Below the pieces are notes generated by a model. The model did not search any database, was not told the DNA's origin, and was given only the letters and a program-made list of their open reading frames with translations. The translations under genes were made by a program, and so were the position numbers. From Octopus sinensis (lineage: Eukaryota): a stretch of 64,000 nucleotides of DNA. Each line of letters begins with the position of its first letter. Position 1 is the first letter of the stretch. Shown one piece after another: positions 4,321 to 43,392 of the stretch. The stretch is taken from contig NC_043001.1 of the NCBI RefSeq assembly GCF_006345805.1, positions 43,338,001 through 43,402,000 on the forward strand, given 5' to 3'.

Positions 4321-4433
4321 TCTCCTGCCTCTTGTTCTAGACCGATAACAGTAACAAGACTTAATTCGAATTATTCTGCAGAACGTCACCAAACTACCAT
4401 GGCAACTTTACTGAGCGGTAAAGAGGTTTCAGC
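4210..4433 (+). CDS. MTHFD1: MTHFD exon 1 (upstream ATG 4210; core ATG 4399 in ACCATGG context)
   Basis: Open frame from 4210 through [12 protein letters not shown], followed by donor GTAAGT at 4434. Confidence 0.85.
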
Positions 4434-7400: not shown

Positions 7401-10400
7401 AAAATATACTGACTGCAATATATAATTAATGATAAAATGCAATAATAATGCATTAAATTTTCCAATTTTAAAGAAGCTAATTTTAAAATATTCAGATCAG
7501 TTTTGAAGACTTCTGTGAAAGATCTAGTGGCATTAAATCTGTTTATAAGAACAAGATGTTAATAAATTTCAGATTTAGATTTTTGATTTAACCCATATTC
7601 TTTTGATATAGTGTTTTTTTGCAGTTTAATTTTTTAGTGTGTTTAATGTAATTTTTCATATTACATTTGTTAAAATTATATATTCAAACAAAACAATACT
7701 TTAACCTTGAAAAGGATATGGTCATTTATCCATTTAGCATTTGTATTACTCTGTCAAATGTAGTATTGAGATTTCAATGATGTGGTTGTTTAGGGGTTTT
7801 TTTTTTCTTTTTTTTTTTTGTCTAGAAATACCTAGTCGGGTAGTCTTGGGATGGTGGATATGGCCAGTTTAACCCTTTGACGTTCAGATAATACTGTGAA
7901 ATTTAATATTTATTTATTCACATTGTTTTGAATTAATTGTGCATTATCTTGTAGCTTTGAAATTTTGATGATGTAATTATTTTCAGAATGACATTGTAGG
8001 GTAAGTGTGAGAGGCCATATATTAACAATTTAAACATAGTACAGGTAGAATATATGGGCCAGATAATGTCAGTTTAAATGCTAATAGGTTAAGTTGCTTA
8101 GTCTTTTATGTTTAACTTTGTATTTTAGATTTTTTGAACTTGTAAACAGATGCTCCAAAAAGCCTCATTTTTTAAAATTTTGTGTTTTGTTTTATGCTTA
8201 ATTGCTTATAGTTAAATAAATAATATTTAAAAATTACAACATTAGAGCTTGGTTAACCCTTTCGTTACCAACCTGGCTGAAACCGGCTCTGGCTCTGTTG
8301 TACAAATGTCTTGTTTTCATAAGGTTTGAATTAAAATCTTCCACCAAACGTTAGTCACAATTTATGTTCCTAACACTAGCTGAATGATAACTAAGTTATT
8401 TTACTACATTCTTTGTTATATTTAAAGTAATTGAAAGAAACACTGAGCATCTCAAAATAAATACAGTAATGAAAGGGTTAAGGTGTTAAAAAGTAGCCTG
8501 ACGACCCACATTGTCCATGTATGTTATACATAATTAGTCAATTCACAAATCAAGGGGTTAGAGGAGTGATAACATAAATTGAAGAGTTGAAATTTTGCGT
8601 ACTGACACCACAAACTTGCATACATTTTGATATTAACTATTACTAATTTCTTGCTTGCTTTCTCTCAAATCTGATGTCTATACAAGTATAAGAAAAAATT
8701 ATTTACACATATAATAGCCAAATCACCTCACAATTATGCATATAATAACCAAATTACCGAGCAATCACACAACCTGATGACTTGGTAGGAAAAAGAGAAC
8801 AAACAGAATTCTAAATATAGAGACAAATTGGTCGAGGCTGACTTAAACAGCTTTTTTTTTTTTTTTTTTGTACATAGATTTCTTGAAGTTTCACCGTGTA
8901 GATGAAACTGTATGCTATTTAAGTGTCTTTGATTTGTTTTGTTAATGTCTTTTTAGGGAGATCCGCAATAAATTGAAAGAAGATATTGAAAACTTCCAAG
9001 ACAAATATCCCAAATTTTTACCTTGCTTAGTTATAGTCCAGGTGAGAATTATTTCTTGAAATTAATGTCTAATCATAATAAAAGCTGGGTTAGTTAGATA
9101 TAGTATTGCAATTAATATTCTATGTTAGATAACAATTAATCTTTGAGCTCAAGCACCTTAGAGATAATCACAGATGTTATGAATACTGCTTGAGATATTC
9201 AAATAATGACATACATACCATTGGCAATGGTTAAGGGAACTTTTAACTTTTCTCTTGTGAGATGGTTCAAGCCATCAATGTGAGCCATAAATGATAACTA
9301 GACATGAACTAGGGATCACTTCAACTGACTGCACTCTCTTTCTATAAAGAGTGAATCTCAGGTATATCAAACTCAGTGTTTTTTCTTCTATAGTTGTATA
9401 TAATTTACTATTTTTGTTACCATCACTTACTATATGCTTATAAAGAATTACTTTAATCTTGGCATATATTGATGAAATACAAAGTAGCTGCCTTATCTTT
9501 AACGTTTCCTAATGACACAATCTTTTTTTCTTTTGCGATGCTTCATCAGAAGAGGAGGGCTAGGATTAGTACCCATGACTTTCTGAAGATCTCTTCGGTA
9601 TGTGGGATTGATGCAGTTGATGCCCATTCTGGATATCTGCAAGGAGCAGGGTACTGAAACTCTGGTTCAAATGCAACTAAATGAACTTCACTAAAGACAC
9701 CCGAGGATATTGTTTTAAACTAAATTGTATTGCATGTTAAGGATTAGGATTATCACTAACATTTTGAAACTGTCATTGGATAATAAACATGAGGGCAAAG
9801 TCTTTGTTTTTATGAGATTTCCAAGATGAAGATTTCATTTCAGAGAAACTAATATTGAAAATTAAAAAGTATTTAAAATTGCTTCATTTATAGAATACAA
9901 AATAAAGTAAAGAAAATATTTGTTTCCATGTATAAATAAATGGTTTAGTCAGGTGCAGAAGTTTATATAAATGTAACAGAAATAAGAGCAGTAAGCTTAA
10001 CTTGAAAGACAAGACAATCTCAACCACATGAATTAGACTTGTTACACTACTACTACTACTACTACCTGTCTGATACTAAATATCAGACAATTGGTGTTAG
10101 TAGTAGTAGCAGTGTATAGTCATAACAATTCTTTTATTAGGTTGGAGACCGTGAAGATTCTAATGTTTATATTAGAATGAAAGTAAAGAATTCAGCTGAC
10201 ATTGGGATGAAAGCAGAGCACATCAAATTACCAAAATCTTCAACTCAAGCTGATGTAAGTTAGATAACAGTACTTACTAATTCAGTTCTTTTATTGCCTT
10301 CTCTTGTTTAGTTATTCAACTGATTTTCATCATCATCATCATCATCATCATCATTGTTTATTGTTGCTTTTTGAATAACAATACTTCTTTCATCAAACTA

Positions 10401-13400
10401 ATAACCATGTTAAATAACACTGATCACCTGACTTTCAGATTGGGTCAAGTGATATAATAAACATAAGCATCACAGGAAGCCAGCAACACTACCATATGAA
10501 TATTGTGTCTTTTTTAAAATATGTTGTTTCAAAGCTTTCTATTCGATTGTGGAATATTCTTAAGCACTTATTTTTTACATGACGCCATTACTTAAAATCA
10601 TGTCTGCTAATAAGTTTTGGAATTAACAAATTTCATGCTGAGAAGTATTTTGCTTATAATCTTATATATGACAAATATTGATAAGGATTTAATTACTGGT
10701 GTGCAATAGACTTATAATTTATTGCTGCAATAAACATGTATCCTTGCTTACCAGGCTGCTTAGTATTGTATATGACCCAATTACACTGTTTGAACACACA
10801 GCCTGTGTGTGTAGTTTGTGTGGTTAATGGATAAGTTTATTGCAGTTGATGTTCAAGTGTTACTCATTAATGGTTAAAAGTTACAAAAGAGACAAGCACA
10901 CAATTCGACTATGAGAATTGTAAAGTGTGTACCTATCAGTTCATCATTATCATTTTCAACATCTATTTTTCTATGCTTGCATGAGTCAGACAAGAGTATG
11001 CTGAAGTGTGTTCTATGGTTGGATGCATTTCCTGATGCCAACCCTCAAGATATTTGCATTTACATTTATTTTATTTTTTTAGGTGTTGGCAACAGTTAAC
11101 AGACTCAATGAAGACCTTACTGTCCATGGTATTATTGTTCAGGTACTTTGACAGCATTCTGCCTTTCTTTTCACAATTGGTAATTCTATTCAGTTAATTG
11201 GTTGATAACCTATCGGGTGGGGGCTATCTACAGCTTTAGGGATTAATCGTGTGCACTAGGAAACAAAGTTTAAATATTAACCAAGCATAAATTGTTAAAA
11301 GTATCCATAGAGCCTGGGACTTTTACAGGAAAATAAAAGGGATCATGTGAAAGGCTTATTTTCTCTAAAATCCTTAGTGATACAAGTCCAATTAAAATGG
11401 CTTTGATAATCAAAACCTTGTCTAAGCAAGAGAATATTAAAATAAAGAAAATTGCAATGTACAACAAATTGCAGCAGTTTGCATTGTTGCCCTTTCTTTC
11501 ATTGTTTATATATAGGCAGCTTTACAGTAAAAAGGCCAATGAGTGAGTCTTCACCTAGTTGTTCAATTTGCTAGAAATAACAGCCTAATTACATTCTATC
11601 AGCATAAAAAATTAACATTGTATAATTTCATGGGTGTACTTACCTGGCGATTTGATGTGTGACTATGTGTTGAAATTAAATTACAATGTGGAAGACACAT
11701 CCTAGACAATCAAAAGCACACAAAGACTGTTAACTTCACTTAAATATTTATTTTTTGGTGTCCAAATTTTTGTCGCACCAAATGATAAATGCTTAAGTGT
11801 TGCTAACAGTCTTTGTGTTTTTGAGTGGCTGATATTTGTCTTCCACACTGACATTGTATAATGTCATCTTAGATTGGATGGTCATAATTGGGATACCTTC
11901 AGCCATAGATATGCTTGGTCACAGCCACGTGAGGCTAAGCAACAACTGTATAGTAAAGAGTAGCAACAGTAGAGACTGACCAAATACCAAAGAATAGAGG
12001 GAAGTCATGTCTACAGTTTTATTTCACTTCTTGGTAATAGTTAGCTTAGTATTACACAATCTTCATTTTCATTCACCTGAGTAGAAGATTGAAGTTTTTT
12101 TAACTAAGAAATCAGTATAAATACAGACGGTTTTATCTTTTTAATTATACACATTTTTTTAAAATGATGATTTTATTAACCCCATGATAACAGGGTTTTT
12201 TTTAATCAAGCAACTAGGTTGCATTGATGGTAGTCATCTCGGCTGAGATCAGCAATTAAGCACACGACAATGGTTCAGCGTATATTTACATCAGGGGCTT
12301 TAACCAGTTTACAGCAGTGATTCATTCATTTGCCTGCACGTGGCTACGGTAATTGCACCAATTCAGGTCAGCACTTAGTACGAGATAATGTTTAACATAT
12401 AGTTACATCAACCTCTTTAGTGCAAATATTGTTTATTTACCTAAACTATATCGCTGTGCAGGATACTCATGCAGTATTATCCCTGAATCAGATCGCTCAG
12501 CAGCACAAGTCGGATCAACTTCATGTATTTACAATCACGTGAATTCAAAAATTGACTTTAGTGTGGTAGAGTTCAAAACAGGATACTGCACATAGTGGCA
12601 TATCACATTGTGAACAAATAGTATTTAGTTTCCTTATGTTTCCCTTTTGCTTTACATACTGTGCATCTCATTGGAGCATTTGTCTTCATGGCGGTGGGGG
12701 AAAATGTCCAACATGGGGATGTCCACATGTTCTGTACTTTGGAAGCTCTGATGCTTCTATCATTTCATAAAACAGTAGATTCCTGAATGTCAATTCATCC
12801 CGTTACACCACCAATTATCTGCCAAATCAAAGACACATTGTCAATTATACACAAGAAAATTTTTTTTGTACCATTTCACAAATTTTCTCACCAATTTGTG
12901 TGTTGTCGCCAGCTGATCTCAGCAATCAACCCTGCCCATCCCTTCATTGTATGAAACAACTACGCTTGGTTTCATTATAGCATTACCATCCTCATCTTGT
13001 TTCCTACTGTTCTTCATGCTTGCAGAATGTGTTGTGGATAACATGCAGACGTTTTTCTTGTCACGTCACGCTAGAGCAAGAATGCTACTATCAGTGCATA
13101 GGTACACTGTTTCCCCCTTTCAAAGTTTTATCAGGTGGCATGTTTTCCCTGTGTATCCTCACAGTCCCACAGGCATTAATCTTCCTCATCTGCAACTGCA
13201 GGAAGAGGTCTGGACTGGAAAACCAGCTGTTCATATAAATATTGTAGCCTTTGACAAACAAGCTTTCATTCAACTCTAATTGACACTAGAGTAGACACTG
13301 GAAGATCCAATCTGTCCTGATCAGTGTAGATTTTGTAATTCCACATATATCTACAGGCTTTGCTAGTTGACTGGCATACTTTATAAACCTTGACTCCAAA

Positions 13401-16400
13401 GCAAGTACATTTGGTCGGGTTGTATTGTTTGAATCAGAGCCTTCCCTTGAATTTCCACAAACTTTATCAATACAAATGTCCTGTGTGGGGACATACATCA
13501 TTCTGAAATTTTCAGCCACTTCATCAATGATAGGATGTATTTAGTGCAACCTATCATCCTGGTTCTTATCTGAGTTGAAATGTAGATTTCAAAAAGCGCC
13601 AAAAATTGATCATGTGCCATCATTTCTGGAAAGAAATGTGTTGGTGTGGCTGGATCCAGATTCCAATGACACTAAGGTCGGTTTATTCACGATGCACATC
13701 AGTATCAGCAGGGCAAGCAGAAATTTGATTTTGACCGTCTGGTTGGAAACCAATCACCACCATGCTGGGGATGGTTTTCAGCATACTCATTTTTGTTCGC
13801 TATATATTGGAACATTTCATTCATCAAAAACTCATGGAAGATTTGCAATGGTGAATTTCCATGTTCAAGGTTTGTCTTTATGTCAGGCGTACCAGTAAAC
13901 CCATACCATTGGACAAAATTGTCTCTTGCACGTCACATGATAGTCTGTTGTTTGGGGCCATTCACTACTGCACGCCTGTGCCTTTGATTCACTGGAATAT
14001 CACTATCACTATTGGAATCATCTGATTCTAAACTAGTAAGAATACTCACTATCTGAATCATTGTCTGAACTGGAAGAAACAACTGGTGAGGTGGTGAATT
14101 TTGGTATTGCCTGGTGCAACAACCGTAAATTTGACAAAACAGGATGTGACAATGAAGTGGTAGGACGTGATGAATGTAAATTCGACGAAACGGGATGCAA
14201 CAGCAAATTGACAGAGCCGGAGTGGCAGGACCAGCCTATCAGGTAGTAAATATTTACATGAAACATGTAATTGACCTATCAGTTGGCAGGTGGACCAGGC
14301 AGCATATAATTACATCAACCAAGCATGTACATTGCATGTGTAAATTTATGTCAACTATTTTAAAAGGATTAACTTGAATTTACATTCTGAAGATTCTCTG
14401 TTAAAAAAAGATTCAGGCATTTTGCTTTGTTTTTATTAACTATTTTTCTTTGTCTCTCATTCTCTCTCTAGCTACCAATGGAATCTGAACATGAAATTGA
14501 TTCTCATCTTGTCACCAATTCTATAATTCCCTCCAAAGATGTTGATGGGTAATACCAAAATATTTTTTATAGGAAACATTTCCTTTTGAAGCTTGCTTAA
14601 CTTGGAAGACAGATATATCTGTGTGTATGTGTATAGGTGTATTGTATATAAGTTTTCTTCCCAACTATAAATCCACTACTTGACACCTGGTAAATGCCTT
14701 CTTTAGCTCCTGGCCAACAAAAGCCTTGTAAGTGAATTGGGTAGACAGAAACTGGAAGAAGTCTGTTGTATTATATCTTTCATTATCATTTAATACCTAC
14801 CTTCCATGCTGGCATGGGTTGTTTGGTTTAACAATATCCAATAAACCAGAAGATTGCACAGAGCTCCAACATCTGCTTTGGTAGGGCTTCTACAGTTGGA
14901 TGCCCTTTCAAGCACCAACCACTTCACAAAGTGTACTGGAAGCTCTTTTCAAAAAGAGGAGTCTCTGCAACTAAGTAGTAAAAGAAGAGGTGGTTTTATG
15001 CCAGGTGTTGTGAAGCTAGAGTATGATAGAGGAACTCACATAAATGTTTTGGTGTAGGGGATATATAGGGTTATGTTGCATTATACAAGTGGTTGGGAAT
15101 AGCTGGAAAGAATCTGTCTGGCAACCGTGTCGGTGGCACGTAAAAGCACCATCCGTTCGCGTCCGTTGCCAGCCTCGGCTGGCCCCCGTGCCGGTGACAC
15201 GTAAAAGCACCGTCCGTTCGTGGCCGGTTGCCAGCTCTGTCTGGCCCCGTGTCGGTGGCACGTAAAAGCACCATCCGTTCGTGTCCGTTGCCAGCATCGC
15301 CTGGCCCTGTGCCGGTGACACGTAAAAGCACCATCCGTTCGTGGCCGTTCGCCAGCTCTGTCTGGCACCTGTGCAGGTGGCACATAAAAAACACCCACTA
15401 CACTCGCGGAGTGGTTGGCGTTAGGAAGGGCATCCAGCCGTAGAAACACTGCCAGATCTGACTGGGCCTGACGAAGCCTTCCAGCTTCACAGACCCCAGT
15501 TGACCCGTCCAACCCATGCTAGCATGGAAAGCGGACGCTAAACGATGATGATGATGATGAATATAAGGATGTTGGTAACAAGGAACAGATAAAGATGTAG
15601 AGGTTAATGTAGTGAGTGATATACAAGGGTGAAAGTGTAGTTAATAGGAAATATCTGGGGCTGGTTATGCGAAACTGGTGTAGGAGACAGCTGTGAACTC
15701 ACTTTATATGCCGGGTCTTCGCAGTCACAGCATATCTCCAGAGGTCTCGATCTTTTGTCATTGCCTCTGTGAGGCCCACGTTTGAAGGTCATGCTTCACC
15801 ACCTCATCCCATGTCTTCCTAGGTCTACCTCTACCCTGGATTCCTTCAACTGTTTGGGAGTGGCACTTCTTCACACAGCTCTCCTCATCTATCCATAGTA
15901 CATGGCCATACCAGTGCAAACGTCTCTCTTGCACACCACATCCAATAAGAAATGACTGACTTTTTTAGAGTCCATTTGGATCTGTATAAAAATAAACAGT
16001 TGCTGCTTGGTGTGATCTGCACATGCATGTATTTTCCACATACACTGTCATGCTATTAAACTGCTAGTCAGTTAACTAATAACCCATGTTATGTTTATTA
16101 AATAAAATTATGGTTATTATCTTGCTTGTATATATTTGTCTATTTAAACAGGTTATTGTTTGCTAACAAAACTTAATAGATCCATTGAAAATTGAATTTG
16201 TATTCTTTGTAGTTTGCATTCAGAAAATGCTGGAAAGTTAGCTGTTGGTGACCTCAGTCACTGTATTACTCCCTGTACTCCACGGGGATGTTTAGAATTA
16301 ATCAAAAAATCAGGTATAGTTTTACTTTTATTTTTTATCTACCATCATTATCATGAGGTGTTATCATCTCTAGAAGCTCATCTTTATTGTCATGGTATTA

Positions 16401-19400
16401 CGTAATTACCAAATTTTGCTAAACCTTTCACTCTACAACATTATATGTCCCAGATTCTTTTTCCAAACACAGATTTAAACTTTACATTTCCTGTTAACAC
16501 CATAGCAGTTACTTGTGACCTTTTAAAAATAGATTTAATTTCATTCTTTTTTTTTTTTTTTAACTAATCGTAAATACTTGTAGTTGTATAAAGTACATGT
16601 AGGTGTAATACACACTAGTGATTAATTATATTACAATATTTAGCTGGTGGTGGTGAGTTGTTGTATTCTTATATTTTAATATTTGGATTTTTTCTAAATT
16701 AGCTTTGTAATGTTGGAGGCTAATCTCTATAAATTAGTATAAATGATTCACTTTATTGATGCAAACATAGCACCTAGCTATTACACTGTATTTACCTAGC
16801 AACAGTTTGTTAGTGATAGTAAACTTGATTATATATAGTTGTATGGTAGAAGTTTGCTTCCCAACTACATGGTCTTGGGTTCAGTCCCACTGTGCGGTAG
16901 CTCAGGCAAGTGTCTTCTGCTACAGCCCTGAACTGACCAAAGCCTTGTGAGTGAATTTGGTTGACAGAAGCTCATCATGCGTGTATGTATTTGTGTGTGC
17001 ATAAGTTGGTATCTCCTTGTCTCCACATCAAATGGTTGTTGTAAATGAGTGTCACTGTCATACAAGTGCTGTCCTTCATTTCCAGTCTTCCATGGAAGCA
17101 TGTCTGGTCATGGGGAATATTACCTTACTTGGCAATAAGAAAATCTGCCTCAAAAACTTCTGTCTGATACATACAAGCATTGGAAAAGTGGGTGGTGGTA
17201 GCATAACTTGATGCCTTATTGATATGCCATTTGGCCTTACATGATTCAAGAGAAAAAACATGAGTATAGTTTTCCTGTTACCTTTTCCATACCTCTAAGA
17301 AAGAGCTGAGCTTATCACTACAATTTAACAAAGCATTACTCAGTTATTAGGCTTTTATTTGATAACTGGGTTGTTTTTGGTAGGAGTATAATGCAATACT
17401 GGAAACAACAATAAATGATGACCTTGTTAGTTACCCAAGGTTCAATACAAGACACCTCTAAGTATTGCAGTGAAGTTAGATCCAGAACCATATGATTTGG
17501 AAGAAAACTTAACCACGCAGCTATGTCTGAATTCATGCATCACCCATATTCCTATTAAGTTGTCATCTCCTTTATCATTTAAAAGGTAAAGTTTATTTGA
17601 TAAATATTATTTAACCTTTTTGATACCTACCTGTCTGAGACTGCTCCTGGTTCTTTAATACAAACTTCCATTTCTAATAAATATTAGATATTTGTTAAAT
17701 CAAGTCTTAATAAATTTTCCTGAATTGAATCTATTCCACTAGGGGTGCCAGTTAGTGGTAAAACTGCTGTTGTGCTAGGTCGAAGCAAAATAGTCGGTGC
17801 TCCCATGTCCAATTTGTTATTATGGAACCATGCTACTGTCACAGTTTGTCACTCAAAGACTGTTGATCTGCCAGCTGTGGTAAGTTTGACAATATTTTTA
17901 CATATCTTTGTGTTACATATGTAATTCTTATTGGATGTTTTACTTGGCATTTCTCATTACTTGTGTGGGTTGGGTTAACCTTACGATGCATAGATCAAGA
18001 TATTTGCAATGATAATCTACTTATGACATTGTGGTAGGTGGGGACAATTTGTTCTTCAGCTGACGAATTGCTGTCCAGCTGACGAATTGCAGAAACCTTA
18101 TATTTTGTCCTCTGAATACAGTTGATTTCAATGGAAGGAAAGAATAATGGTATTAGAACTTGTAATTTAAACAAGTGAAACTGAATACTTTACTTTCTCT
18201 GTCAACTCACTCCTCAGTAGAATCTTGATTAATTCATAAGATTTTTATCTTCTGTATCACTCTGCAGTTTAGCATTACGTTTTGCAATTATCTAAAGTTG
18301 CATATTTTGTATTATTGCATTTTGGTTCAGATATTTATAATAAATAAATAAGTGTGCTTATTTATTTATGATGAACTAATTATTAAGGAATACTTTTACT
18401 TCCAAGTTTAGTGAGCCTAAAAGTATTCTATATGGAAAATGAGCCATTTTTACATTGCTGCTACCTTTGAGAAAATTAAGAGAGGCTATATGTAGTCAAA
18501 TATTCTTCAAATCACATCTTTCTGTCTTACAGAAATAAAAGACATTGGAGAATGTAGTTTCAGATACATTCTTTAAAAAAAAAAAAAAAAAGACATGGTC
18601 GTAGAGCTGATTTAGATTTAAACAACAACTATTGTTATTGATAAGAAATGTTTGCATGAATTACTAGATTAAATATCTCTATGTTGAAAACTTCTTTGAA
18701 ACACGCTACTACATTGCTGTCACAAATTAATGATGTTACTTATTATTTACTTGATTTTGTACTGGTTGCAATGTTGCTGATAAAATATTCTTTTTTTCAC
18801 ATGTCTGCAATTAATATTTTTTTTACAATTTTAAATTGTGTACCAACTCTGATTTTAAAATATTCTTCTGTTTATGTAAAAAAAAATTGGTCTGATTTTT
18901 TTTTCATTGGAAACAAAAGTAGACATCATCTCTAAAAGTTTTTACTATTACACATACCACAAGTTAGCATAGTTTTAAAAAAATATGATGCATTTATGAG
19001 CAATGTGTAAATAATTGTAGCTATAAACAAATGTCTAAACTTTTAATCACATTTGCACTAATGGGCTGGATATTAGAAAAAGATGTATTAGTAAACTGTC
19101 ACTGGGTTCTTAAATCTATGTATCCTTTGGTACATTTGCTTCATATGCTTTGCTCAGCTGTACGTGCGACATTTGTCAGTGTCTTCCTTTTATTATTGAA
19201 AACTTTTTAAGCTTCAGTTTAAGAAATTAATTTAAGTGTTCTTTTTCTGTTTTCAGGCTATTATCTTTTCATTGCAACATATGTCTAGATGATGGAAGTT
19301 TATCAATGTTAAATTATTTTACTGTATTTAATTTACAGACTTGTAATGTAAATTAAGAAATAAGCTTGTTTTGTCACCATCTTGTAGTTTTTTCTCTTCA

Positions 19401-20524
19401 CTTAAACTGCTATTTACTTTTGGAAAAGATTTGAATAGATGTAACACTACCTATCTTTCCCTTTTCTAAAGCCATAAACAGACACCTAATTATGCATTTG
19501 ACAAATGATTGATTAATTGTAAACATTACCTTTAAAGAGAAGAGTAGATATTCATTTGCTAATTAAACTAAAAATATTGTACAGGTGAGAACAGCTGACA
19601 TACTTGTGGTTGCTATAGGAAGACCAGAATTTGTCAAGTCAGATTGGATTAAGCCTGGTGCAGTTGTTGTTGATTGTGGAATTAATTCTATCCCAGGTTA
19701 GTGAAATACCTTCATATTTACTTCAGCTGGGGCATTTGTATAACACTTGTGTATATATACGTTTTAAGGAGACAGTTGCAATGTCACATGTTGATGCAAA
19801 ATCAAGTTTTATTTTCTACACTACCCTCTCTTTTCAACTTCACCCCTGTCTCTTGAAAATGCAAGTAGTCATGTTGCTTCTCTACAGCAAGGAATTTGTT
19901 CTGCTCTACCCCTTTTCCTCACATTTTATTCCTCTCTACTTTTTATAAGGTTGCTCTTTTCTAGATTCAGGGTTCATAGTCTTGCGAGCTGCATGATGGC
20001 CAAACTAGTGATGTTCGTATAGAAAATTTTCCAGCACATACTGTAAAATGATTGGAATTGAGAACATACACCTTCATACATGCCAAATAGACACTGGAGC
20101 ACTGATGTTGGTTTGTCAGAATTACCATTTTATTAGTTCAGCATAAGTCAGCATGAAAAAGACGTGTAAAGGGGTGATTTTTATATTGGCATATTTTGAA
20201 GTTTAGTGTTTGACAAGATAGTTAAAGAAACTGTTAATGGATATTTTCTAAGAGAAAAGTTGATGAGGCTTCAGTGTCATGTAATTATACAATGCGGTAA
20301 ATAACTATATAGATCAAATTGTCTGTATGTTTTCTTGTTTTACAGATGAGACAAAGAAAAGTGGAAAGAGACTTGTTGGTGATGTTGATTTTTGTGGAGC
20401 TAAAGAAGTTGCCTCTTGGATTACGCCAGTTCCGGGGGGTGTTGGTCCCATGACTGTGGCTATGCTGCTTCAGAACACTGTAGAAAGTGCCAAGAAGTTT
20501 GCGCCCAAGCAGTTTGAAAGTTGA
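4210..20524 (+). CDS. MTHFD1: MTHFD1-type NADP-dependent methylene-THF dehydrogenase/cyclohydrolase, D/C domain only (299 aa from ATG 4399; 362 aa from ATG 4210)
   Basis: Hand-spliced exons with GT-AG ends: 4399(4210)-4433, 8957-9041, 10141-10254, 11083-11142, 14472-14548, 16213-16313, 17743-17879, 19585-19696, 20346-20524. Total 900 nt, in frame. Motifs: [14 protein letters not shown] (YxxxK), [57 protein letters not shown]. Stop TGA at 20522-20524. Confidence 0.93.
4970..5760. repeat. Foldback-like copy of the ATCCGATTCTG repeat family in MTHFD intron 1
   Basis: GTTTTTGGTTATGGAGGATCCGATTCTGAAAA (~5103-5135) is inverted as TTTCAGAATCGGATCCTCCATAACCAAAAAC (~5718-5748). TACGTAGAAAAATACGAAG is also inverted. 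Confidence 0.6.
6886..7400 (-). mobile_element. CR1/L2-like LINE 3' remnant plus the abundant 'TTAGGAAGGGCATCCA...AACCCATGCTAG' tail repeat
   Basis: Tail motif 6886-7030 recurs at ~14810, 15410, 21200, 23420, 24860, 53810 and 58020. ORF 6999-7343 resembles a decayed LINE C-terminus. Confidence 0.5.
7869..8092. mobile_element. TTAA-flanked piggyBac-type MITE, family B
   Basis: TTAA|CCCTTTG...ATGCTAATAGG|TTAA. Partial relatives at ~23130-23225, 53950-54067, 54140-54350 and 54400-54500. Confidence 0.6.
8253..8481. mobile_element. TTAA-flanked piggyBac-type MITE, family A
   Basis: TTAA|CCCTTTCGTTAC...GTAATGAAAGGG|TTAA. Near-identical copies at 51517 and 52186. Confidence 0.85.
8957..9041 (+). 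CDS. MTHFD1: MTHFD exon 2
   Basis: ttttag|G GAG ATC CGC ... GTC CAG|gtgaga; [28 protein letters not shown]. Confidence 0.92.
10141..10254 (+). CDS. MTHFD1: MTHFD exon 3
   Basis: [38 protein letters not shown]|gtaagt. Confidence 0.93.
11083..11142 (+). CDS. MTHFD1: MTHFD exon 4
   Basis: [20 protein letters not shown]|gtactt. Confidence 0.92.
12176..14372 (-). mobile_element. Decayed piggyBac (PGBD4-like) transposon in MTHFD intron 4
   Basis: Frameshifted minus-strand transposase: D-E-S-like region followed by KFKGRLRFKQY/RARFG (~13480-13390), [16 protein letters not shown] (ORF 13091-13273), and C-terminal Cys-rich domain [10 protein letters not shown]...[20 protein letters not shown] (~12680-12550). 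TTAA at both ends, but the TIRs are poorly matched. Confidence 0.8.
14472..14548 (+). CDS. MTHFD1: MTHFD exon 5
   Basis: [26 protein letters not shown]|gtaata. Confidence 0.92.
15126..15560 (+). repeat. SINE/LINE-tail element with five ~61-bp tandem units and a (GAT)n tail
   Basis: CACGTAAAAGCACC recurs at 15137, 15198, 15259, 15319 and (degenerate) 15381, followed by the TTAGGAAGGGCATCCAG tail and GATGATGATGATGA. Confidence 0.85.
15700..15945 (-). mobile_element. RTE-clade LINE ORF2 C-terminal fragment
   Basis: Minus strand reads [11 protein letters not shown]...[17 protein letters not shown] (RTE-type WxGHV / GRPxxTW). Confidence 0.75.
16213..16313 (+). CDS. MTHFD1: MTHFD exon 6
   Basis: [33 protein letters not shown]|gtatag. 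Confidence 0.92.
16840..17200 (+). mobile_element. Diverged tRNA-derived SINE
   Basis: GGGTTCAGTCCCACTG...GGCAAGTGTCTTCT...CCAAAGCCTTGTGAGTGAATTTGG, as in 2584-2953. Confidence 0.7.
17743..17879 (+). CDS. MTHFD1: MTHFD exon 7
   Basis: [46 protein letters not shown]|gtaagt. Confidence 0.94.
19585..19696 (+). CDS. MTHFD1: MTHFD exon 8
   Basis: [37 protein letters not shown]|gttagt. Confidence 0.94.
20346..20524 (+). CDS. MTHFD1: MTHFD terminal exon 9
   Basis: [59 protein letters not shown]. Confidence 0.92.
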
Positions 20525-20607
20525 AGTTGTTACAATTACAGTAGTTGTAGTTGTGGAGACACACTTGCACATGACTGAATCTAGTAGTAATTCACTACTT
20601 TGTGAAA

Positions 20608-20613
20608 AATAAA
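20608..20613 (+). terminator. Polyadenylation signal candidate for the MTHFD gene
   Basis: AATAAA 84 nt after the stop codon, followed by U/GU-rich sequence. Confidence 0.55.
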
Positions 20614-24133: not shown

Positions 24134-24207
24134 TTATGCTACATCTTCCTTAGTGGCTCTGGTGTAGATGATCTGTGAATGGTGTTTGGATACCAGCTTG
24201 ATGTCAC
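24134..24207 (-). CDS. RPS25: RPS25 exon 4 (terminal)
   Basis: ttttag|GT GAC ATC AAG CTG GTA TCC ... GCA TAA. Confidence 0.93.
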
Positions 24208-27200
24208 CTAAAATTTTTTAAAAAAATAACAGTAAAGATATCTACAACAAAAGATAAAATTATGAAGATGCAAAATAATAGAAAACAAATTTATATATTT
24301 ACAGGCAGCATGTTCAAGCATACTATATTTACTTGTGTATATAATATGCAGACCCACGTGTGAGCAACAAAATATCAGAAAAGTATCTCGTGTATAAAAT
24401 GCACAGACTTCTCTAGTATATATGGAAACAAGTTATAATTGCTGTATAAAATACACCAAATAAATGCACACATCCTCCATAAAAATCTTTGACCGTTACC
24501 AATTAAACATTTCTTCTCTCCCACATCCTAGTCTCCGTCATTTCCAGACCATCTTATGTTGCCTTGAATATACATACCTATCATAGAGTATTGAATGTTC
24601 ATACCAGCATCCCAATCACACATCGCTCTTATTTATGCCTCATTCAAAGAGACTAGCGAGCAAGCAATCAAGCAGAGACAGGGCTCTGAGAACCCCCTAG
24701 TCATATTGAAAACAGTTATTTCTCTAGCACTAGTGTCCCCTCCCCCACCAAAAAACCACACACTCTACACTTTAAAAAAACGTGAAGATTGTAAAGCCTA
24801 ACTGAGGATGCTAAAGCTCTAATGCTGGCATGATCAAAATCCCCAGTACACTGGAAAGCCATTGCTATTAGGAAGGGCATCCAGTTGTAGAAACCAAACA
24901 AGATGAGATCCTCTTCTAGGTGAAAACAGGATGCTTTAAATACAGACTATCTGTCCAATCCATGCTAGAGTAGAAAGCAGATGAAAAGGAATATATGTAC
25001 AACTACACCATATAGAGTGGCATTAAAAATACAAAATCTCTCAAATCACAACCCTTTTCTATGCAACCAATGCATGAAAATTACTCAACACAAAACTTGA
25101 GAGTGTGACCTGTATCACTCACCTAGCTGAATATAAAAGAAAAGATCTTAAACCAAGTTAACCAACTATCAAACCACCTGTACACATTTCATGATTTAAA
25201 AGCGACAAATTTTGAACTGAACAGAATTTGATACTCCAGAACAGCATTAATTAGTCATTCTTTATATGAGCATTATCTTCTTATAATTATATAAACTAAA
25301 ACACTTTTGAGAAACAAGAATTTGCACACATACTACCATACAATAAATATCTAGCTAAGATACAGGCTATTTCTCTTAACTATCTTCACCATCCCTACCC
25401 TTCACAAAACACTAACTCTTTATGACATTGACTAATAAATGCTTACTTAACATGAACTTCAACTTTAAACTCACCAGTTTAGGAAGTTCTGCAAAAATAA
25501 GATATTGCTCACTTGGATTAACACACAAAGTAATTTTATATGAAAAAAAATAAAAGTTATTAGAATTTTCAAATGTATTTTCAAGCAAAACAAAATATAA
25601 CTGTCTAGAAAAAAAATAAAGAACAAGGCTTATGGACCAAAAATAATAAGCCTGGTTATCTGTTCAGAACTTCTTAGAGGATAAGAACATCATAATTAAC
25701 TTCAGGAGTCAGAACTTTATCATCTCTACAGAGAACCCAAATCAACTATTGAACAAAACATGCAAACTGAAGAATAACAAGATGCAGAATATAAAAATAT
25801 TGTTAAAATAAATGCTAGAAAGTATTTTGTAGAATATATTTTAATTTGTTTGGTTTGGAGAAAGGTACCTGTGGCCTTTTGCACACATTGAGACTAGTGA
25901 AATAAATGTAGCTAATTTTCCTAACGATCACCCACCAACATACATGCAGCTAAAATAAAAAAGTACACCAGATCAGGCTCATATTAAAACAACCTATACA
26001 TTTTCAATTACTTATAAACTTCAACTAAAACATTAATACTATGCCAAAAAAGAAGCTAATATTTTACACCCAGACCCAGACCAACAGATACCACTCATAT
26101 TAGACTAGCTTAAAAGCCTGTGGCCCCAAACTAAAGAGAGCAATAATAATAAAGCATTTATTGGTACCCTATCAAAATGGTATTACTTTAAATTCAGAAA
26201 AAATGAAAAACTTGTAAGTTCAAAAATTTTGGGAGTTCTTTTAAAATTCAACTGTTAGCATATAAATTCTCATCTAGACCTGATCACAATGCTAGATGTT
26301 CAAGAACCAAATGAAGGGCAAATTTTCTATCTCAGGATCATCCTGATTCCAAAGACATATATGTCTATGTAGAGCAAATATAGACTGAGATACAGGCTAT
26401 TGAGTAATGCAGTCACTTAACACTGGCGCTTCTGAATTAAGTAATCCATGCCATAAAAAAAACTTGCAAATGAAATTTCATAAAATATAGGATTTAGAGG
26501 AAACAGTGTCCATGTCCGAAGAAATTTTGTAAAAATAACCATTTCATTATTACTCAGATGTTTAAAATAAAAAGCTATTATGTAAAATAATAGAAAAGTT
26601 TTAATTGAAAATGGACAGTTTAGTATCAAAAGGAATGTTTTACTTTCCAGATAAAAAATAAAGAATTGCTATTCATTAAAAGAGCTAAGCTGGTTTAGTA
26701 ACATTTACTAGCAAACCAATATTGTCTTGACCTTATCTTTTTTTAAAATTAGTTTGATTTTAGATACTTCATGTTGAACTTAAAACACCACTTCATTTTC
26801 ACATGTTAGTGCAAGATATTTTACGAGTAGAGACCGACAGCCATCAGGGATGCTTGGTTCCACAACAGAACTGATATTCATAACCATGAACTTTTGATCT
26901 ATCAAAAATCAGTTTACAAAAACTCACAATTTAATTAGACATCATGAATTGTATTTCAAAAAGTGATGTAACTTTTCAATGTTGTAAAACAAAGAATTGT
27001 CAAGACAAAACTTGGTGCCTCACCTAGTTATTTCCTCTTTAATTTTTATTTTCTTCTTTAATTACCAGATACTGAAAGATCACCTTTTATGCTTAATGAC
27101 ATGCTATATACATACATATATTATATGCATGCAAATTTAACTGAATGTTTATATATGTTGACCGTTGCTTTGAGCCTCTGAGAGCTAAGAATATAACTTC

Positions 27201-30200
27201 CTTCCTTGGTAACAAGAATAGCAACTGGTTGCAAAATCCCACCTCATATACACCCCCCTCCTCCAAACCATAGAAAAAGGGTACTACTTAAGAAGAGTGG
27301 TCCGGGTGTGTGTACTCGCACATCCGCGCTAGCTAGTCGATCCTTTGTGTTTTTGTGCTTTATTTACTGTTTTTAAAAAATTATGTTGTGTTTTATTTAT
27401 TTTGCTAGGTAGTTGTTGTAGGATCGACTAGTCACGGATACCCGCACCGGGACCACTCTTCTTTAGTACCAGAAAAAGTTACACAAGCATAAGACTCAGC
27501 TACAAGCCACATGCAGTTTGAAAGGTATTAATATAAATGTCAGTTCTCTCCCCACAAATTTCGTTGCAATTGTAATCTATGCAGATTGAAAGAAAAAAAC
27601 TTGGATCTTGTGAATTTTCCAAAGTCCTCACCCCACCCACTCCACTGCTTTATGTGCATTTTTGTTTTCATACTGCACTATTTCTTTTTATTTCATTTCC
27701 AGGCAATATTGTAAGCATTAACTATATATTTCAGTCTCAATCTGATATTTTATGCTTACGTCGAATCTACTGCACGTCAGTTCTCGCCCAAACATGAGCA
27801 AAAATCATTCAATTGATCGATCCCTCCAATCTATATTAGTAGTGCTTTTCAAACTCCAACCACCAGCAATTGAGCTTAACTTGCCTTCATGCATTCAACA
27901 AAGTTCTTTCAGAAGTGAAATAGCACATTGCTCTCTGGTCTCTCACAAAGAGGATTACTTGACAGTAGCCTTGTACCAAGTTGAAATTTCAAACAAAATC
28001 ATTTCTTTCATTTATACAATTGCTAAATTTGAAAACTCTGATCATTCCAATCCGGAAGTCCAATGTTTGTTATAGTGTTTATTCAATACACACAGCTAGC
28101 TATTTAATGTAACCTATTCAGTATACAAATATAATTTTTAAATTACAAACCTGTTAAATTCTCATTTTAATATTGACAGTTATAAAGAAAATATTTTCTA
28201 GATACCATATAAACTCAACTCTAAAATAAAAAAAAAATTTAATGAATTGCTACAAAACAAAAAAAATTCCTACCTAGTCTTTCCAATTCACGGAGGGCAA
28301 GTTTTGCCAGAGAACCACGAATCTTCAATCTTTCACTAACCACTGAAGGTGTGACCAGTTTATAGCTTGGGACTTCTTTTAACAACTTATCATAAGTAGC
28401 ATTGTCAAAAAATACTAAATTATTTAACTTGTCCCTGACTTTTCCTTTTGACCACTTCTGCAATGGAAAAAAAAAAACAGCAGTTAGTAAAATACTTTGA
28501 TCAGTTAAGTAAAAGTTTTTCATGAGATATGTATAAAATGAGTGATAAAGTTCAGAACATACACATAGTGCACCTGTCTTGACGGACTTAATTGTATTTG
28601 TTTCTTTTCTAATCAGAAGTGCTTTTGACCAACAAGTATGAAGTATTTGGCAGGGAAATTTTGCTTGCTCATCATTAATAAACTTTCTTACTTGTGGGAG
28701 CTTATGAATAGTTTATGTAGTACTGAACTTAAGTTTTAAATATTTTCCCAAGTAATTAATATATTTTTCTAACACTACTGTATTCATTCACAAAATGTGT
28801 TATATTTCACATCAGTCATCATTAAGCTATTCTTTTCTGATGAGGTCTAATAAGACCAGAACATATCTAGGAGTTACCATACTTCTTGAGATCAAAGTCA
28901 ATTCCCATCGGACTCCATGTTTTAATATTTTTCATCTCCCCATTATACTTCACTTTTTAAAAACCAAAATTAAAAGGATTACATTAATCACAAAGAATGT
29001 AATTTGAACTGTTTTATGACTGTCACTGCTTTAATGCAAAAATTGGTAGCCAGCCAATTCATGATAATTTCATTTAACACTTCAATATCAGACTGGAATT
29101 GATTTGCTAATAAAAACAAAATCCATAGCCTTCAGTGTTATTTATACACAATATGTATGGTATTTTGAGTTACTCAACAGTTACATTAAATGATCCATAA
29201 ATTTATTATGTTCCATTATATAAATGCAAGATTGTTCCTGGACTCAGTGTTCCAGTCTTGGTCATCAAGTTTATCTTAAAAACACATCAATGCTTTTATA
29301 ATATTAAAAAAAAAAATTTTGGAGCTTTTCCCTCATAACTTTCAGGAAATGGATATATATTGGATTTTTTTTTTATGGATTCCCACGTTTTCAGCTATGG
29401 AGAATCCGATTCTGAAAAAAAAATTGTAAAATTTCAATCTGTCAAAAGAAATTTTTTAAATTGCATGCAACCCCCCCCCCACGCCCAATTCTACGGCCTT
29501 GGCCTTCAAGCTGGCTATCCACATGCTAGAAATATGCAATCAATCTACTCATCTCAAGTGAAATTAAAGTGTTCATTCTTTTGCTTTGAAAGTTATAGCA
29601 AAGAAATACTGTGACAAAGTGAACTTAAAGAGAATCATTTGACCAGCACAAGACATTTGCGAAACAGAAATTGGTCTTGCCCATTTGAGATTTGGCTGCT
29701 ATTTCTAGCATGTGGATAACCTGCTTGAAGGCAAAAAGCCGTAGAATTGGGAGAGGAGGTTGTTGGGGGTTTTTTCCAATATATATCCATTTTCCTGAAT
29801 AATATGAGGGAAAAATCGGATCTTTTGAATTTTCCGGAAGTCCCCTCCTCCCACCCATATTCGTTTTTTACAATTAACACTCAGCAGGCTGTTCTTTTGT
29901 TTACGTTAACGCGTGAGGATCTTAGAAATATTTTTCAGAATCGTAATCTTCGCATTTTTCTACGTATTTGGGGGGGGGGGTAGAAGGGTTGAATATATTA
30001 TATTGATAATGCGATTTTTGAAATTTTTTTTTTTTTCAGAATCGGATCCTCCATAGCCAAAAACGTGGGATTCCGTAAAAAAAGAAATCAATATATATAC
30101 ATATCCATTTTCCCAAAAGTTATAACGGGAAAATCGGATGTGGATTTTCCGAAAGTCCCTTCCCCCAACCCGCCAGGGTCATCAGCGTGCATTTTTTTCT

Positions 30201-41590: not shown

Positions 41591-41597
41591 GCAGAAA

Positions 41598-42397: not shown

Positions 42398-42428
<31 letters not shown>

Positions 42429-42446
42429 TATGTGTGTATATATATA

Positions 42447-43264: not shown

Positions 43265-43265
43265 T

Positions 43266-43361: not shown

Positions 43362-43392
<31 letters not shown>

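What the first reader, a model, noticed from the sequence alone, without database searches (positions are those of the whole stretch)
20346..20613. MTHFD1-type enzyme that ends after the dehydrogenase/cyclohydrolase domain: possible fission of C1-THF synthase
Seen: the spliced ORF is a C1-THF-synthase-like N-terminal domain but stops at ...[11 protein letters not shown] (aa 299). An AATAAA follows at 20608, and I found no formyl-THF synthetase exons before the convergent RPS25 3' end. Known: animal MTHFD1 is trifunctional (~935 aa) and continues W-x-I-x-Y...PVPSD into the synthetase domain. Residues equivalent to human Y52, K56, Q100, D125, C147 and the NADP-specifying GRS (R173/S174) are all retained, so this looks like an active NADP-type D/C. 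That differs from MTHFD1L (dead D/C) and from MTHFD2 (NAD/Mg/Pi-type). Inference: a stand-alone bifunctional enzyme derived from MTHFD1, with the synthetase encoded elsewhere or the gene split. This would parallel the proposed origin of MTHFD2 by synthetase loss.
Basis: partly seen in the sequence, partly recalled or inferred. Interest (0 to 1): 0.75.

Follow-up and report, generated by a model that had tools for sequence, protein, structure and literature searches.

The report
Octopus stand-alone MTHFD1-type dehydrogenase/cyclohydrolase gene
Octopus, argonaut and cuttlefish share a working gene that keeps only the first two of the three activities of the folate enzyme MTHFD1, has probably been re-addressed to mitochondria, and arose independently of the similar-looking MTHFD2, though whether the third activity is encoded elsewhere is not settled.

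Summary
A 9-exon gene on the + strand (4210-20524) encodes an MTHFD1-type dehydrogenase/cyclohydrolase (D/C) that stops right after the D/C domain. No synthetase (FTHFS) exon or relic lies anywhere in the 64 kb. AATAAA is at 20608, and a convergent RPS25 gene follows.

The protein is 362 aa, not 299. Its first 63 residues are Arg/Ser/Thr-rich and almost acid-free, like a mitochondrial presequence.

The D/C domain is 61% identical to primate MTHFD1 and 72-74% to full-length mollusc MTHFD1, but 41% to MTHFD2. It keeps all catalytic and NADP-type residues, including Ser197.

All eight introns match mollusc MTHFD1. The ORF ends two codons past the ancestral exon 9/intron 9 junction, where GAAAGT replaces the GT donor. 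The gene is shared by Octopus, Argonauta and Sepia (RPS25 neighbour in all three) and is under strong purifying selection (dN/dS about 0.05).

Short forms in fish, chelicerates, tardigrades and a sponge do not group with it, so they arose separately. In the coral Acropora a short isoform comes from read-through at what appears to be the same intron.

"Derived from MTHFD1 by synthetase loss" is supported. "Fission" is untested, because no tool could search a cephalopod genome for FTHFS.

The parts
4210..4433 (+). Exon 1 (coding part). Codons 1-63 form the Arg/Ser/Thr-rich N-terminal extension. Codon 64 (ATG at 4399, context ACCATGG) is the ancestral MTHFD1 start, followed by [12 protein letters not shown]. 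The donor is GT.
   Evidence: ORF continuity and an in-frame upstream stop at 4159. P0001 carries the same N-terminus; composition is 8 R, 0 K, 0 D, 1 E.
8957..9041 (+). Exon 2 ([28 protein letters not shown]).
   Evidence: AG/GT borders. The intron position matches the Patella and Aplysia MTHFD1 genes.
10141..10254 (+). Exon 3. It holds S49, Y52 and K56 (human numbering) of the active site.
11083..11142 (+). Exon 4. It ends at Q100 (human numbering), in ...HGIIVQ.
14472..14548 (+). Exon 5. It holds D125, in KDVDG.
16213..16313 (+). Exon 6. It holds C147, in TPCTPRGC.
17743..17879 (+). Exon 7. It holds the NADP site: G172-R173-S174, I176 and S197. The 8-residue MTHFD2 insertion is absent.
   Evidence: PMC9173628 identifies Ser197/Arg233 as a determinant of cofactor preference.
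19585..19696 (+). Exon 8. It holds C236, in VDCGIN.
20346..20524 (+). Exon 9, the terminal coding exon (the finding), ending in TGA at 20522-20524.
   Evidence: Pfam THF_DHG_CYH_C is matched to its end.
20516..20524 (+). GAAAGT followed by TGA, at the position of the ancestral phase-0 exon 9/intron 9 splice donor. The GT donor is absent, and read-through adds Glu-Ser-stop.
   Evidence: Codon alignment: Patella GGG|GTATGT, Aplysia GCG|GTCAGT, Argonauta TTT|GATAGCTGA, Sepia GTT|TGATAA.
20608..20613 (+). AATAAA, the candidate polyadenylation signal 84 nt after the stop. A second candidate, ATTAAA, is at 20655.
   Evidence: No 3'-end reads were available, so its use is inferred.
24149..30512 (-). 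Convergent RPS25 gene. Coding exons were seen at about 24149-24208, 28242-28460 and 30357-30512. It bounds the locus about 3.6 kb after the D/C stop.
   Evidence: Annotated as Ribosomal_S25 in the O. vulgaris and Argonauta loci. It is also 2.8 kb downstream of the Sepia gene.

Best explanation
The gene encodes a 362-aa precursor. It has an N-terminal mitochondrial-type presequence of about 60 residues, followed by a complete NADP-type 5,10-methylene-THF dehydrogenase / 5,10-methenyl-THF cyclohydrolase domain of the MTHFD1 lineage. It has no 10-formyl-THF synthetase domain.

Origin. The gene arose from an intron-containing MTHFD1 gene in the cephalopod lineage, before octopods and cuttlefish split. 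The copy ends at the intron that separates the D/C domain from the linker. The old 5' splice site is gone, translation runs 0-2 codons into the former intron and stops, and the transcript is polyadenylated shortly after. An upstream in-frame ATG in exon 1 added the targeting peptide.

Function. The mature protein corresponds almost residue for residue to the isolated human D/C domain used for crystal structures. It should therefore interconvert CH2-THF, CH+-THF and 10-CHO-THF with NADP(H), most likely in the mitochondrial matrix. That is the job MTHFD2/MTHFD2L do in vertebrates.

What is shown: gene structure, absence of FTHFS in the locus, MTHFD1 affinity, conserved residues, conservation and constraint across coleoids, and truncation at the old exon/intron junction.

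What is inferred: mitochondrial import, NADP use, polyadenylation site, and that a trifunctional MTHFD1 still exists elsewhere in the genome. I think the last point about 75-80% likely; it was not tested.
For: - Gene model: 9 exons, AG/GT borders, 1089-nt CDS. It matches annotated P0001.
- Domains: only PF00763 and PF02882 are found.
- No FTHFS in the 64 kb or within 10 kb downstream in O. vulgaris, Argonauta or Sepia.
- Affinity: gapless alignment to the human MTHFD1 D/C domain 1A4I at 405 bits, versus 208 bits for MTHFD2. Identity is 72-74% to full-length mollusc MTHFD1 D/C domains but 60-62% to the short forms of other phyla that were compared.
- Trees (NJ bootstrap): cephalopod shorts 100%; Mollusca including them 73%; all short forms monophyletic 0%.
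- Residues: catalytic and cofactor positions are identical to mollusc MTHFD1. S197 replaces the Arg233 of MTHFD2 (PMC9173628, PMC9796130).
- Introns: all eight positions are shared with the Patella and Aplysia MTHFD1 genes.
- ORF end: 0-2 codons past the ancestral exon 9 donor in Octopus, Argonauta and Sepia.
- Constraint: dN/dS is 0.054 (Octopus vs Argonauta) and 0.058 (vs Sepia) over the D/C domain.
- Transcripts: five cuttlefish RNA-seq contigs carry the intron-free 361-aa ORF with the N-extension. They stay colinear with the genome past the stop.
- N-extension: 55-65 aa, 7-9 basic residues and at most 1 acidic in four cephalopod sequences. Full-length mollusc MTHFD1 proteins have none.
- Synteny: MRPL28 | D/C gene | RPS25 in O. 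vulgaris and Argonauta, and RPS25 downstream in Sepia.
Against: - No cephalopod full-length MTHFD1 or separate FTHFS protein was retrieved. 'Duplicate plus truncation' therefore cannot be told from 'the only copy lost or split off its synthetase'.
- The cephalopod clade branches where a cephalopod MTHFD1 orthologue would be expected, which fits both readings.
- Mitochondrial targeting rests on composition only. No predictor or experiment was run.
- The conserved Met at the ancestral start, in a strong ACCATGG context, could yield a cytosolic form as well.
- The trees are distance-based NJ on 290 columns, with weak deep nodes.
- Poly(A) site use was not shown for Octopus.
Confidence: 0.7

Rival explanations
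1. True gene fission or domain loss. This is the only MTHFD1 orthologue of coleoid cephalopods. The synthetase half is either a separate FTHFS-only gene elsewhere or is lost. The D/C half would then serve mitochondria from Met1 and possibly the cytosol from Met64.
For: - The cephalopod short clade sits where the cephalopod MTHFD1 orthologue should be, beside gastropod and bivalve full-length genes.
- No cephalopod full-length MTHFD1 appeared among the 120 best hits of a profile whose D/C half was cephalopod, although eleven other mollusc groups did.
- The ancestral start Met is kept in all four cephalopod sequences, in an ACCATGG context in Octopus.
Against: - The list cut-off (1717 bits) lies just under the other molluscs (1719-1772). 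A slightly faster-evolving cephalopod protein would be missed.
- No gastropod full-length MTHFD1 locus examined has RPS25 or any other called gene within 10 kb (Patella, Aplysia, Lottia). Nothing therefore marks the octopus locus as the ancestral one.
- Zebrafish, where a comparable MTHFD1-derived paralogue (mthfd1a) exists, keeps the trifunctional gene too (PMC3410756).
- Published surveys report MTHFD1 as near-universal in animals (PMC11064299).
Confidence: 0.13
2. The 362-aa product is only the short isoform of a much larger trifunctional gene. Its FTHFS exons would lie more than 43 kb downstream, with RPS25 and other genes nested in a giant intron. The Acropora short isoform shows that such isoforms exist.
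For: In Acropora, one gene makes both forms by read-through of what appears to be the same intron. Cephalopod introns can be long; the Sepia gene spans 30 kb.
Against: - The GT donor at the old junction is absent in Octopus (GAAAGT), Argonauta (GATAGC) and Sepia (TGATAA).
- There is no FTHFS signal in the remaining 43.5 kb on either strand. Other genes, including RPS25 and a fibrillarin-like gene, occupy that stretch.
- The annotations of two octopods and a cuttlefish all end the gene here.
Confidence: 0.03
3. The enzyme is cytosolic. Translation starts at Met64, and the upstream 63 codons are 5' leader or a non-targeting extension.
For: Met64 has an optimal Kozak context and is conserved. The first ATG has A at -3 but A at +4. 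dN/dS of the extension is 0.47, much looser than the domain.
Against: - An open, in-frame extension of 55-65 codons is kept in octopods and decapodiforms. It always has a basic, acid-poor, Ser/Thr-rich composition.
- It is present in five cuttlefish mRNA contigs.
- First-AUG initiation is the default, and presequences normally evolve fast.
Confidence: 0.1
4. It is the octopus orthologue of MTHFD2 (the NAD/Mg/Pi-type mitochondrial D/C enzyme), simply misnamed.
For: It has the same two-domain architecture and a presequence-like N-terminus.
Against: - 40.8% identity to human MTHFD2 versus 61% to primate and 72-74% to mollusc MTHFD1.
- 208 versus 405 bits.
- It lacks Arg233 (has Ser) and the 8-residue insertion.
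- MTHFD2 falls outside the MTHFD1 clade in the tree.
Confidence: 0.01

Closest known systems
MTHFD1 (trifunctional C1-THF synthase), D/C domain; human structures 1A4I, 1DIA, 6ECQ
   Same: It has the same fold family (PF00763 + PF02882). The alignment is gapless at about 61% identity. Catalytic residues S49/Y52/K56/Q100/D125 and NADP-site residues R173/S174/I176/S197/C236 are identical. All eight introns are shared with mollusc MTHFD1 genes. The mature length matches the crystallised D/C fragments of 296-309 residues.
   Different: There is no linker and no FTHFS domain. A 63-aa N-terminal extension is present. It sits at a separate locus next to RPS25.
MTHFD2 / MTHFD2L (mitochondrial bifunctional D/C enzymes)
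   Same: It has the D/C-only architecture and a presumed mitochondrial location. The proposed evolutionary route is the same: a trifunctional ancestor that lost its synthetase (PMC9796130, PMC9173628).
   Different: It is an independent and much younger event. Identity is 41%. It keeps Ser197 instead of Arg233 and lacks the MTHFD2 insertion, so NADP rather than NAD/Mg/Pi dependence is expected.
Zebrafish mthfd1a and the 320-330 aa teleost 'C-1-tetrahydrofolate synthase, cytoplasmic-like' proteins
   Same: These are MTHFD1-derived paralogues with an N-terminal leader and an intact D/C domain. The synthetase is degenerate in cyprinids (Danionella P0122, 925 aa) and absent in most of the teleosts listed. 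A mitochondrial leader is predicted for zebrafish mthfd1a (PMC3410756).
   Different: They nest inside vertebrate MTHFD1 with 100% bootstrap, not with the cephalopod gene. They are therefore a separate origin.
Acropora MTHFD1 short isoform (P0008 versus P0278)
   Same: A D/C-only product ends at what appears to be the same domain-boundary junction, seven residues after the conserved SAK motif in both.
   Different: In the coral it is an alternative transcript of the trifunctional gene. The intron is read through and adds a conserved 25-aa tail, and there is no N-terminal extension. In cephalopods the short form is fixed as its own gene.
Bacterial, plant and trypanosomatid FolD/DHCH bifunctional enzymes
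   Same: They have the same two activities and the same two-domain architecture.
   Different: Identity is only about 49-51% to the FolD-length (287-297 aa) database representatives used as outgroups. The cephalopod protein lies inside animal MTHFD1, so it is a secondary return to the FolD architecture.

Membership tests
MTHFD1 (C1-THF synthase) lineage | D/C domain (PF00763 + PF02882) that groups with MTHFD1 orthologues rather than with MTHFD2 or FolD | tested here: met
   405 bits to human MTHFD1 D/C versus 208 to MTHFD2. 72-74% identity to mollusc MTHFD1. The Mollusca clade has 73% bootstrap.
MTHFD1 (C1-THF synthase) lineage | C-terminal FTHFS domain (PF01268) in the same polypeptide, giving the trifunctional enzyme | tested here: not met
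   The ORF stops at 20522. Pfam finds no FTHFS. There are no FTHFS exons or relics in the 64 kb or in the downstream flanks of three cephalopod loci.
MTHFD1 (C1-THF synthase) lineage | NADP-type cofactor site (R173, S197 and neighbours) | tested here: met
   By sequence only: R173, S174, I176, S197 and C236 are as in MTHFD1, and positions 171/216/218 are as in mollusc MTHFD1. The activity was not measured.
MTHFD1 (C1-THF synthase) lineage | Shared exon-intron structure with MTHFD1 genes | tested here: met
   All eight intron positions match Patella and Aplysia MTHFD1. The ORF ends at the ninth junction.
MTHFD1 (C1-THF synthase) lineage | Cytosolic protein with no N-terminal targeting peptide | tested here: not met
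   A 63-aa basic, acid-poor extension is present. Full-length mollusc and primate MTHFD1 proteins have none. The location itself was not tested.
MTHFD2 / MTHFD2L | Membership of the MTHFD2 clade | tested here: not met
   40.8% identity, and MTHFD2 falls outside the MTHFD1 clade with the FolD-like outgroups. 208 and 205 bits.
MTHFD2 / MTHFD2L | NAD/Pi/Mg site (Arg233 in place of Ser197) and the insertion after LLH | tested here: not met
   Ser at the Arg233 position and no 8-residue insertion (PMC9173628).
MTHFD2 / MTHFD2L | D/C-only architecture with a mitochondrial presequence | tested here: inconclusive
   The architecture criterion is met. The presequence is inferred from composition only.
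Split (fission) C1-THF synthase | A separate FTHFS-only gene and no trifunctional gene in the same genome | not testable with these tools
   No tool searches cephalopod genomes. The last protein search listed no cephalopod FTHFS protein, but that is uninformative.

The most novel reading that the evidence does not exclude
Coleoid cephalopods have no trifunctional MTHFD1 at all. On this reading the ancestral gene was broken at the domain-boundary intron. This locus would be its D/C half, now sent to mitochondria from Met1 and to the cytosol from the conserved Met64. The synthetase would be encoded separately or lost. That would be the first natural fission of the opisthokont FolD-FTHFS fusion in an animal.
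Probability: 0.12. Interest if true: 0.75.

Novelty: new variant of a known kind. Interest (0 to 1): 0.5.

Why it matters
MTHFD2 is widely said to have evolved from a trifunctional MTHFD1-like enzyme by losing its synthetase and then switching cofactor. Here is a younger, independent case caught at the first step. The synthetase is gone, a mitochondrial-type leader has been gained, and the NADP site is untouched.

The mechanism is also legible in the DNA: the gene ends at the domain-boundary intron and the splice donor is missing.

Similar D/C-only MTHFD1 derivatives turned up in teleosts, chelicerates, tardigrades and a sponge. A coral makes the same product as an isoform by intron read-through. 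The four-gene picture of animal MTHFD enzymes in the one family survey I read (PMC11064299) therefore looks incomplete.

Database names such as "C-1-tetrahydrofolate synthase, cytoplasmic" are probably wrong on both counts for these proteins. If the enzyme is mitochondrial and NADP-linked, it bears on how invertebrate mitochondria make NADPH and formyl-THF.

Tried and rejected
- MTHFD2 orthologue: rejected on score, identity, tree position and cofactor residues.
- Pseudogene or truncated relic: rejected. dN/dS is about 0.05 across octopod and cuttlefish comparisons, and spliced transcripts exist.
- Assembly error at the TGA: rejected.
- One ancient metazoan 'short MTHFD1' paralogue family. The first two protein searches suggested this, because they returned almost only 290-410 aa proteins. 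It is rejected for two reasons. The search tool under-lists long proteins when the query is short; a full-length query returned 900+ aa proteins. In bootstrapped trees the short forms were never monophyletic.
- Arion P0005 as a short mollusc relative: it is a fragment of ordinary gastropod MTHFD1, 83% identical to Aplysia.
- Synteny test for the ancestral locus. The Patella, Aplysia and Lottia MTHFD1 loci show no called gene within 10 kb, and a direct search of the Patella and Aplysia loci found no RPS25. The test is uninformative. Look-ups for Ruditapes and Mya found nothing.
- Finding a cephalopod full-length MTHFD1 with a chimeric cephalopod-D/C + FTHFS profile: none was listed, which is inconclusive.
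- Literature searches for cephalopod MTHFD genes found nothing relevant.
- The 50%-cluster representative search gave no taxon resolution for animals.
Full report
**What is in the window**

It starts after an AG at 20346. It reads (D)[58 protein letters not shown] and stops at TGA 20522-20524. AATAAA follows at 20608 and ATTAAA at 20655.

Eight further exons upstream, all with AG/GT borders, complete a D/C coding sequence. The same exon, however, is open upstream to an ATG at 4210, with an in-frame stop at 4159. This gives a 1089-nt CDS of 362 aa.

That protein equals the annotated Octopus vulgaris protein P0001, named 'C-1-tetrahydrofolate synthase, cytoplasmic', apart from one residue in the extension. 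The window is 94-99% identical at DNA level to the O. vulgaris assembly GCA_951406725.2. It is therefore another haplotype or a very close species, and the stop context is identical in both.

**No synthetase here**

Pfam finds only THF_DHG_CYH and THF_DHG_CYH_C. tblastn with real full-length MTHFD1 proteins (a mammal, two 936-937 aa metagenome proteins and a cyprinid) hits the D/C exons only. An HMM built from 141 FTHFS domains and run with all filters off against the six-frame translation of the whole window gives one chance-level hit, with i-E 6 and score -7.6.

A convergent RPS25 gene ends about 3.6 kb after the stop. Further on lie retroelement fragments and a fibrillarin-like gene.

**Which family**

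The protein aligns without a gap to the human MTHFD1 D/C domain (1A4I) at 405 bits. Human MTHFD2 scores 208 bits and MTHFD2L 205.

I verified my MTHFD2 sequence against PDB 7EHJ; all 315 residues matched. Over 290 aligned columns the octopus domain shows these identities:

| Compared with | Identity |
|---|---|
| Full-length MTHFD1 of bivalves and gastropods | 72-74% |
| Capitella MTHFD1 | 68% |
| Vertebrate MTHFD1 | 61-63% |
| MTHFD2 | 40.8% |

S49, Y52, K56, Q100, D125, C147 and G172-R173-S174 are kept. So are the positions that separate the MTHFD1 cofactor site from the MTHFD2/2L site. These are I176, S197 and C236, with L171, I216 and R218 exactly as in mollusc MTHFD1. The 8-residue MTHFD2 insertion is absent.

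Ser197 versus Arg233 is described as a key determinant of NADP versus NAD preference (PMC9173628). The six differing cofactor residues are listed in PMC9796130. It is untested in activity.

**A caution about the searches**

The first two protein searches returned almost only 290-410 aa proteins from many phyla. That looked like an old, pan-metazoan short family. It is partly an artefact. With a 933-aa chimeric profile (cephalopod D/C plus FTHFS from three full-length proteins, alignment A1) the same tool returned only 900+ aa proteins. So with a short query it under-lists long proteins.

One apparent short mollusc relative, Arion P0005, is a fragment of ordinary gastropod MTHFD1 and is 83% identical to Aplysia.

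**Where the gene came from**

In NJ trees of the D/C domain with 200 bootstraps:
- The four cephalopod short proteins form a clade (100%).
- That clade sits with the full-length MTHFD1 of gastropods and bivalves (Mollusca, 73%).
- Teleost short proteins sit inside vertebrate MTHFD1 (100%), next to cyprinid mthfd1a.
- Chelicerate short proteins form their own clade (96%).
- 'All short forms monophyletic' has 0% support.

No short form from a gastropod or bivalve appeared in the search that favours short proteins. The cephalopod gene is thus a lineage-specific derivative of MTHFD1. D/C-only derivatives have arisen several times.

**How it was truncated**

All eight introns of the octopus gene lie at the same positions as in the Patella and Aplysia MTHFD1 genes. 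In those genes the next junction is a phase-0 donor seven codons after the conserved ...SAK motif: Patella GGG|GTATGT and Aplysia GCG|GTCAGT. At that point:
- Octopus reads TTT|GAAAGT TGA.
- Argonauta reads TTT|GATAGC TGA.
- Sepia reads GTT|TGA TAA.

The ORF therefore ends 0-2 codons into what was intron 9, and no GT donor is left. The octopus GAAAGT differs from a consensus GTAAGT by one base. That resemblance is suggestive, not proof.

Cuttlefish mRNA contigs continue colinearly with the genome past the stop, which shows that this is a terminal exon there.

The same-looking junction is used differently in the coral Acropora. P0008 (324 aa) and P0278 (the N-terminal part of the FTHFS-containing form) are identical for 299 residues. 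In the genome, the short form's 25-aa tail, VSPTLKMGLSLAPLFPYLRRLMLRK, is encoded directly after that exon. This is intron read-through. The long form instead splices to an exon 2 kb further on. Similar tails occur in other coral-like sequences.

**Conservation and constraint**

O. vulgaris and Argonauta both have MRPL28(-) | D/C gene(+) | RPS25(-). Sepia has RPS25 2.8 kb downstream. None has FTHFS exons in the 10 kb downstream.

dN/dS over the D/C domain is 0.054 (Octopus vs Argonauta, dS 0.94) and 0.058 (Octopus vs Sepia). The N-terminal extension gives 0.47.

Five RNA-seq assemblies of a cuttlefish carry the intron-free 361-aa ORF, including the extension. The gene is functional and is shared by octopods and a cuttlefish, so it predates their split.

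**The N-terminal extension**

The octopus extension has 8 Arg, no Lys, no Asp, 1 Glu and 14 Ser/Thr in 64 residues. Argonauta has 6 R, 3 K, 1 D. The cuttlefish and squid-like transcripts have 5 R, 2 K, 1 D. Full-length mollusc and primate MTHFD1 proteins start directly at the D/C domain.

This is the composition of matrix-targeting presequences, but I ran no dedicated predictor, so targeting is an inference.

The ancestral start Met is retained in all four cephalopods. In Octopus it sits in an ACCATGG context. Dual initiation, giving a mitochondrial and a cytosolic form, is possible but speculative.

Comparable extensions occur in the scorpion, tardigrade, sponge, theridiid spider and teleost short forms. 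Zebrafish mthfd1a was reported to have a predicted mitochondrial leader and a mutated synthetase (PMC3410756). The Danionella protein P0122 (925 aa) shows that degenerate synthetase directly.

**What remains open**

Whether cephalopods also keep a trifunctional MTHFD1 decides between 'duplicate that lost its 3' half' and 'fission or loss'. None of the available tools searches a cephalopod genome. The full-length profile search listed eleven other mollusc groups but no cephalopod. Its cut-off (1717 bits) was only just below those molluscs (1719-1772), so a slightly faster-evolving cephalopod protein would be missed.

The Patella, Aplysia and Lottia MTHFD1 loci have no called neighbours within 10 kb, so synteny does not help. 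Literature searches found nothing on cephalopod MTHFD genes.

I favour duplication plus truncation, at about 0.75-0.8, for two reasons. Zebrafish keeps the trifunctional gene alongside its mthfd1a paralogue. And MTHFD1 is reported as near-universal in animals (PMC11064299).

**Novelty**

The gene model is already in public annotation, but under a name that is probably wrong twice: it is not a synthase and probably not cytoplasmic. The one survey of the family I read describes animals as having MTHFD1 and MTHFD2, duplicated in vertebrates. It does not mention D/C-only MTHFD1 derivatives.

I rate this a new variant of a known kind. It is of moderate interest as an independent, mechanistically legible replay of the proposed MTHFD2 origin, and as part of a recurrent pattern.

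Noticed in passing
L013 (Acropora digitifera) 14975-15136 and 17164-17253; proteins P0008, P0278: One coral MTHFD1 gene makes both a form continuing into the FTHFS domain and a D/C-only isoform. The short form reads through the splice donor after ...SLQMQK into the intron, adding a 25-aa tail (VSPTLKMGLSLAPLFPYLRRLMLRK). Similar tails occur in other coral-like sequences (P0012, P0277).
   Followed up: partly
Proteins P0024, P0047, P0088 (teleosts, about 320-340 aa); P0122 (Danionella, 925 aa); P0102 (Culter): Teleost short 'C-1-THF synthase-like' proteins group with cyprinid mthfd1a. The cyprinid synthetase domain is present but degenerate (for example GEGRRTITIGL in place of GEGKSTTTIGL). This looks like a decay series from trifunctional to D/C-only, with an N-terminal leader.
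   Followed up: partly
Proteins P0040, P0106, P0077 (spiders), P0317 (tick), P0478 (scorpion), P0057 and P0111 (tardigrades), P0098 (sponge), P0118 (wasp), P0085 (millipede); locus L007: Many other animals have annotated D/C-only MTHFD1-type proteins ending within about 3 residues of the same junction, several with basic N-terminal extensions. The spider locus L007 has no FTHFS exon within 10 kb downstream. Its last exon is fused, so its intron pattern differs.
   Followed up: partly
L006 (Sepia pharaonis) 10001-10135 versus transcripts L008-L012: The deposited Sepia gene model P0269 (370 aa) has a different, acidic first exon from the Arg-rich N-terminus seen in five RNA-seq contigs (P0003). 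The genome annotation's first exon is probably wrong.
   Followed up: partly
L001 1-2657 and L002 3165-7982 (just upstream of the window's start): A mitochondrial ribosomal protein gene (MRP-L28) lies head-to-head upstream of the D/C gene in both octopods, 2 kb away in Argonauta. A shared bidirectional promoter with a mitochondrial gene is conceivable.
   Followed up: no
window 52750-53193 and 54729-55013, + strand: A fibrillarin-like gene. It has an RGG/GGF-rich N-terminal exon and an exon reading [59 protein letters not shown].
   Followed up: no
window 33310-35918 (-), 48142-48909 (+), 60852-61208 (+): Transposable-element remnants, judged from the translations by eye. They include a retroelement pol/gag-like ORF run, a gag-like ORF, and a mariner/Tc1-like transposase fragment (...YYTNMLRQLQRAIKTKRPGKLMKGILFYQNNTPAHKS).
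   Followed up: no
window 6869-7135, 14845-15054, 21165-21458, 23358-23609, 53620-53931: A dispersed repeat appears in introns and intergenic DNA. It is recognisable in translation by a shared motif (...LDALP.(T/A)NHFT...). It is probably a SINE-like element, and one copy lies 0.6 kb downstream of the D/C gene's stop.
   Followed up: no
window 41300-43530: Long TG/CA-rich and (CATA)n-like microsatellite tracts give spurious HTHTHT and VCVCMYV ORFs on both strands.
   Followed up: no
(tool behaviour): With a query of about 300 aa, the search for homologous proteins listed no protein longer than 540 aa. Yet 930-aa MTHFD1 proteins score as well on the domain. With a 933-aa query it listed only long ones. 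Length distributions from that tool should not be read as biology.
   Followed up: yes
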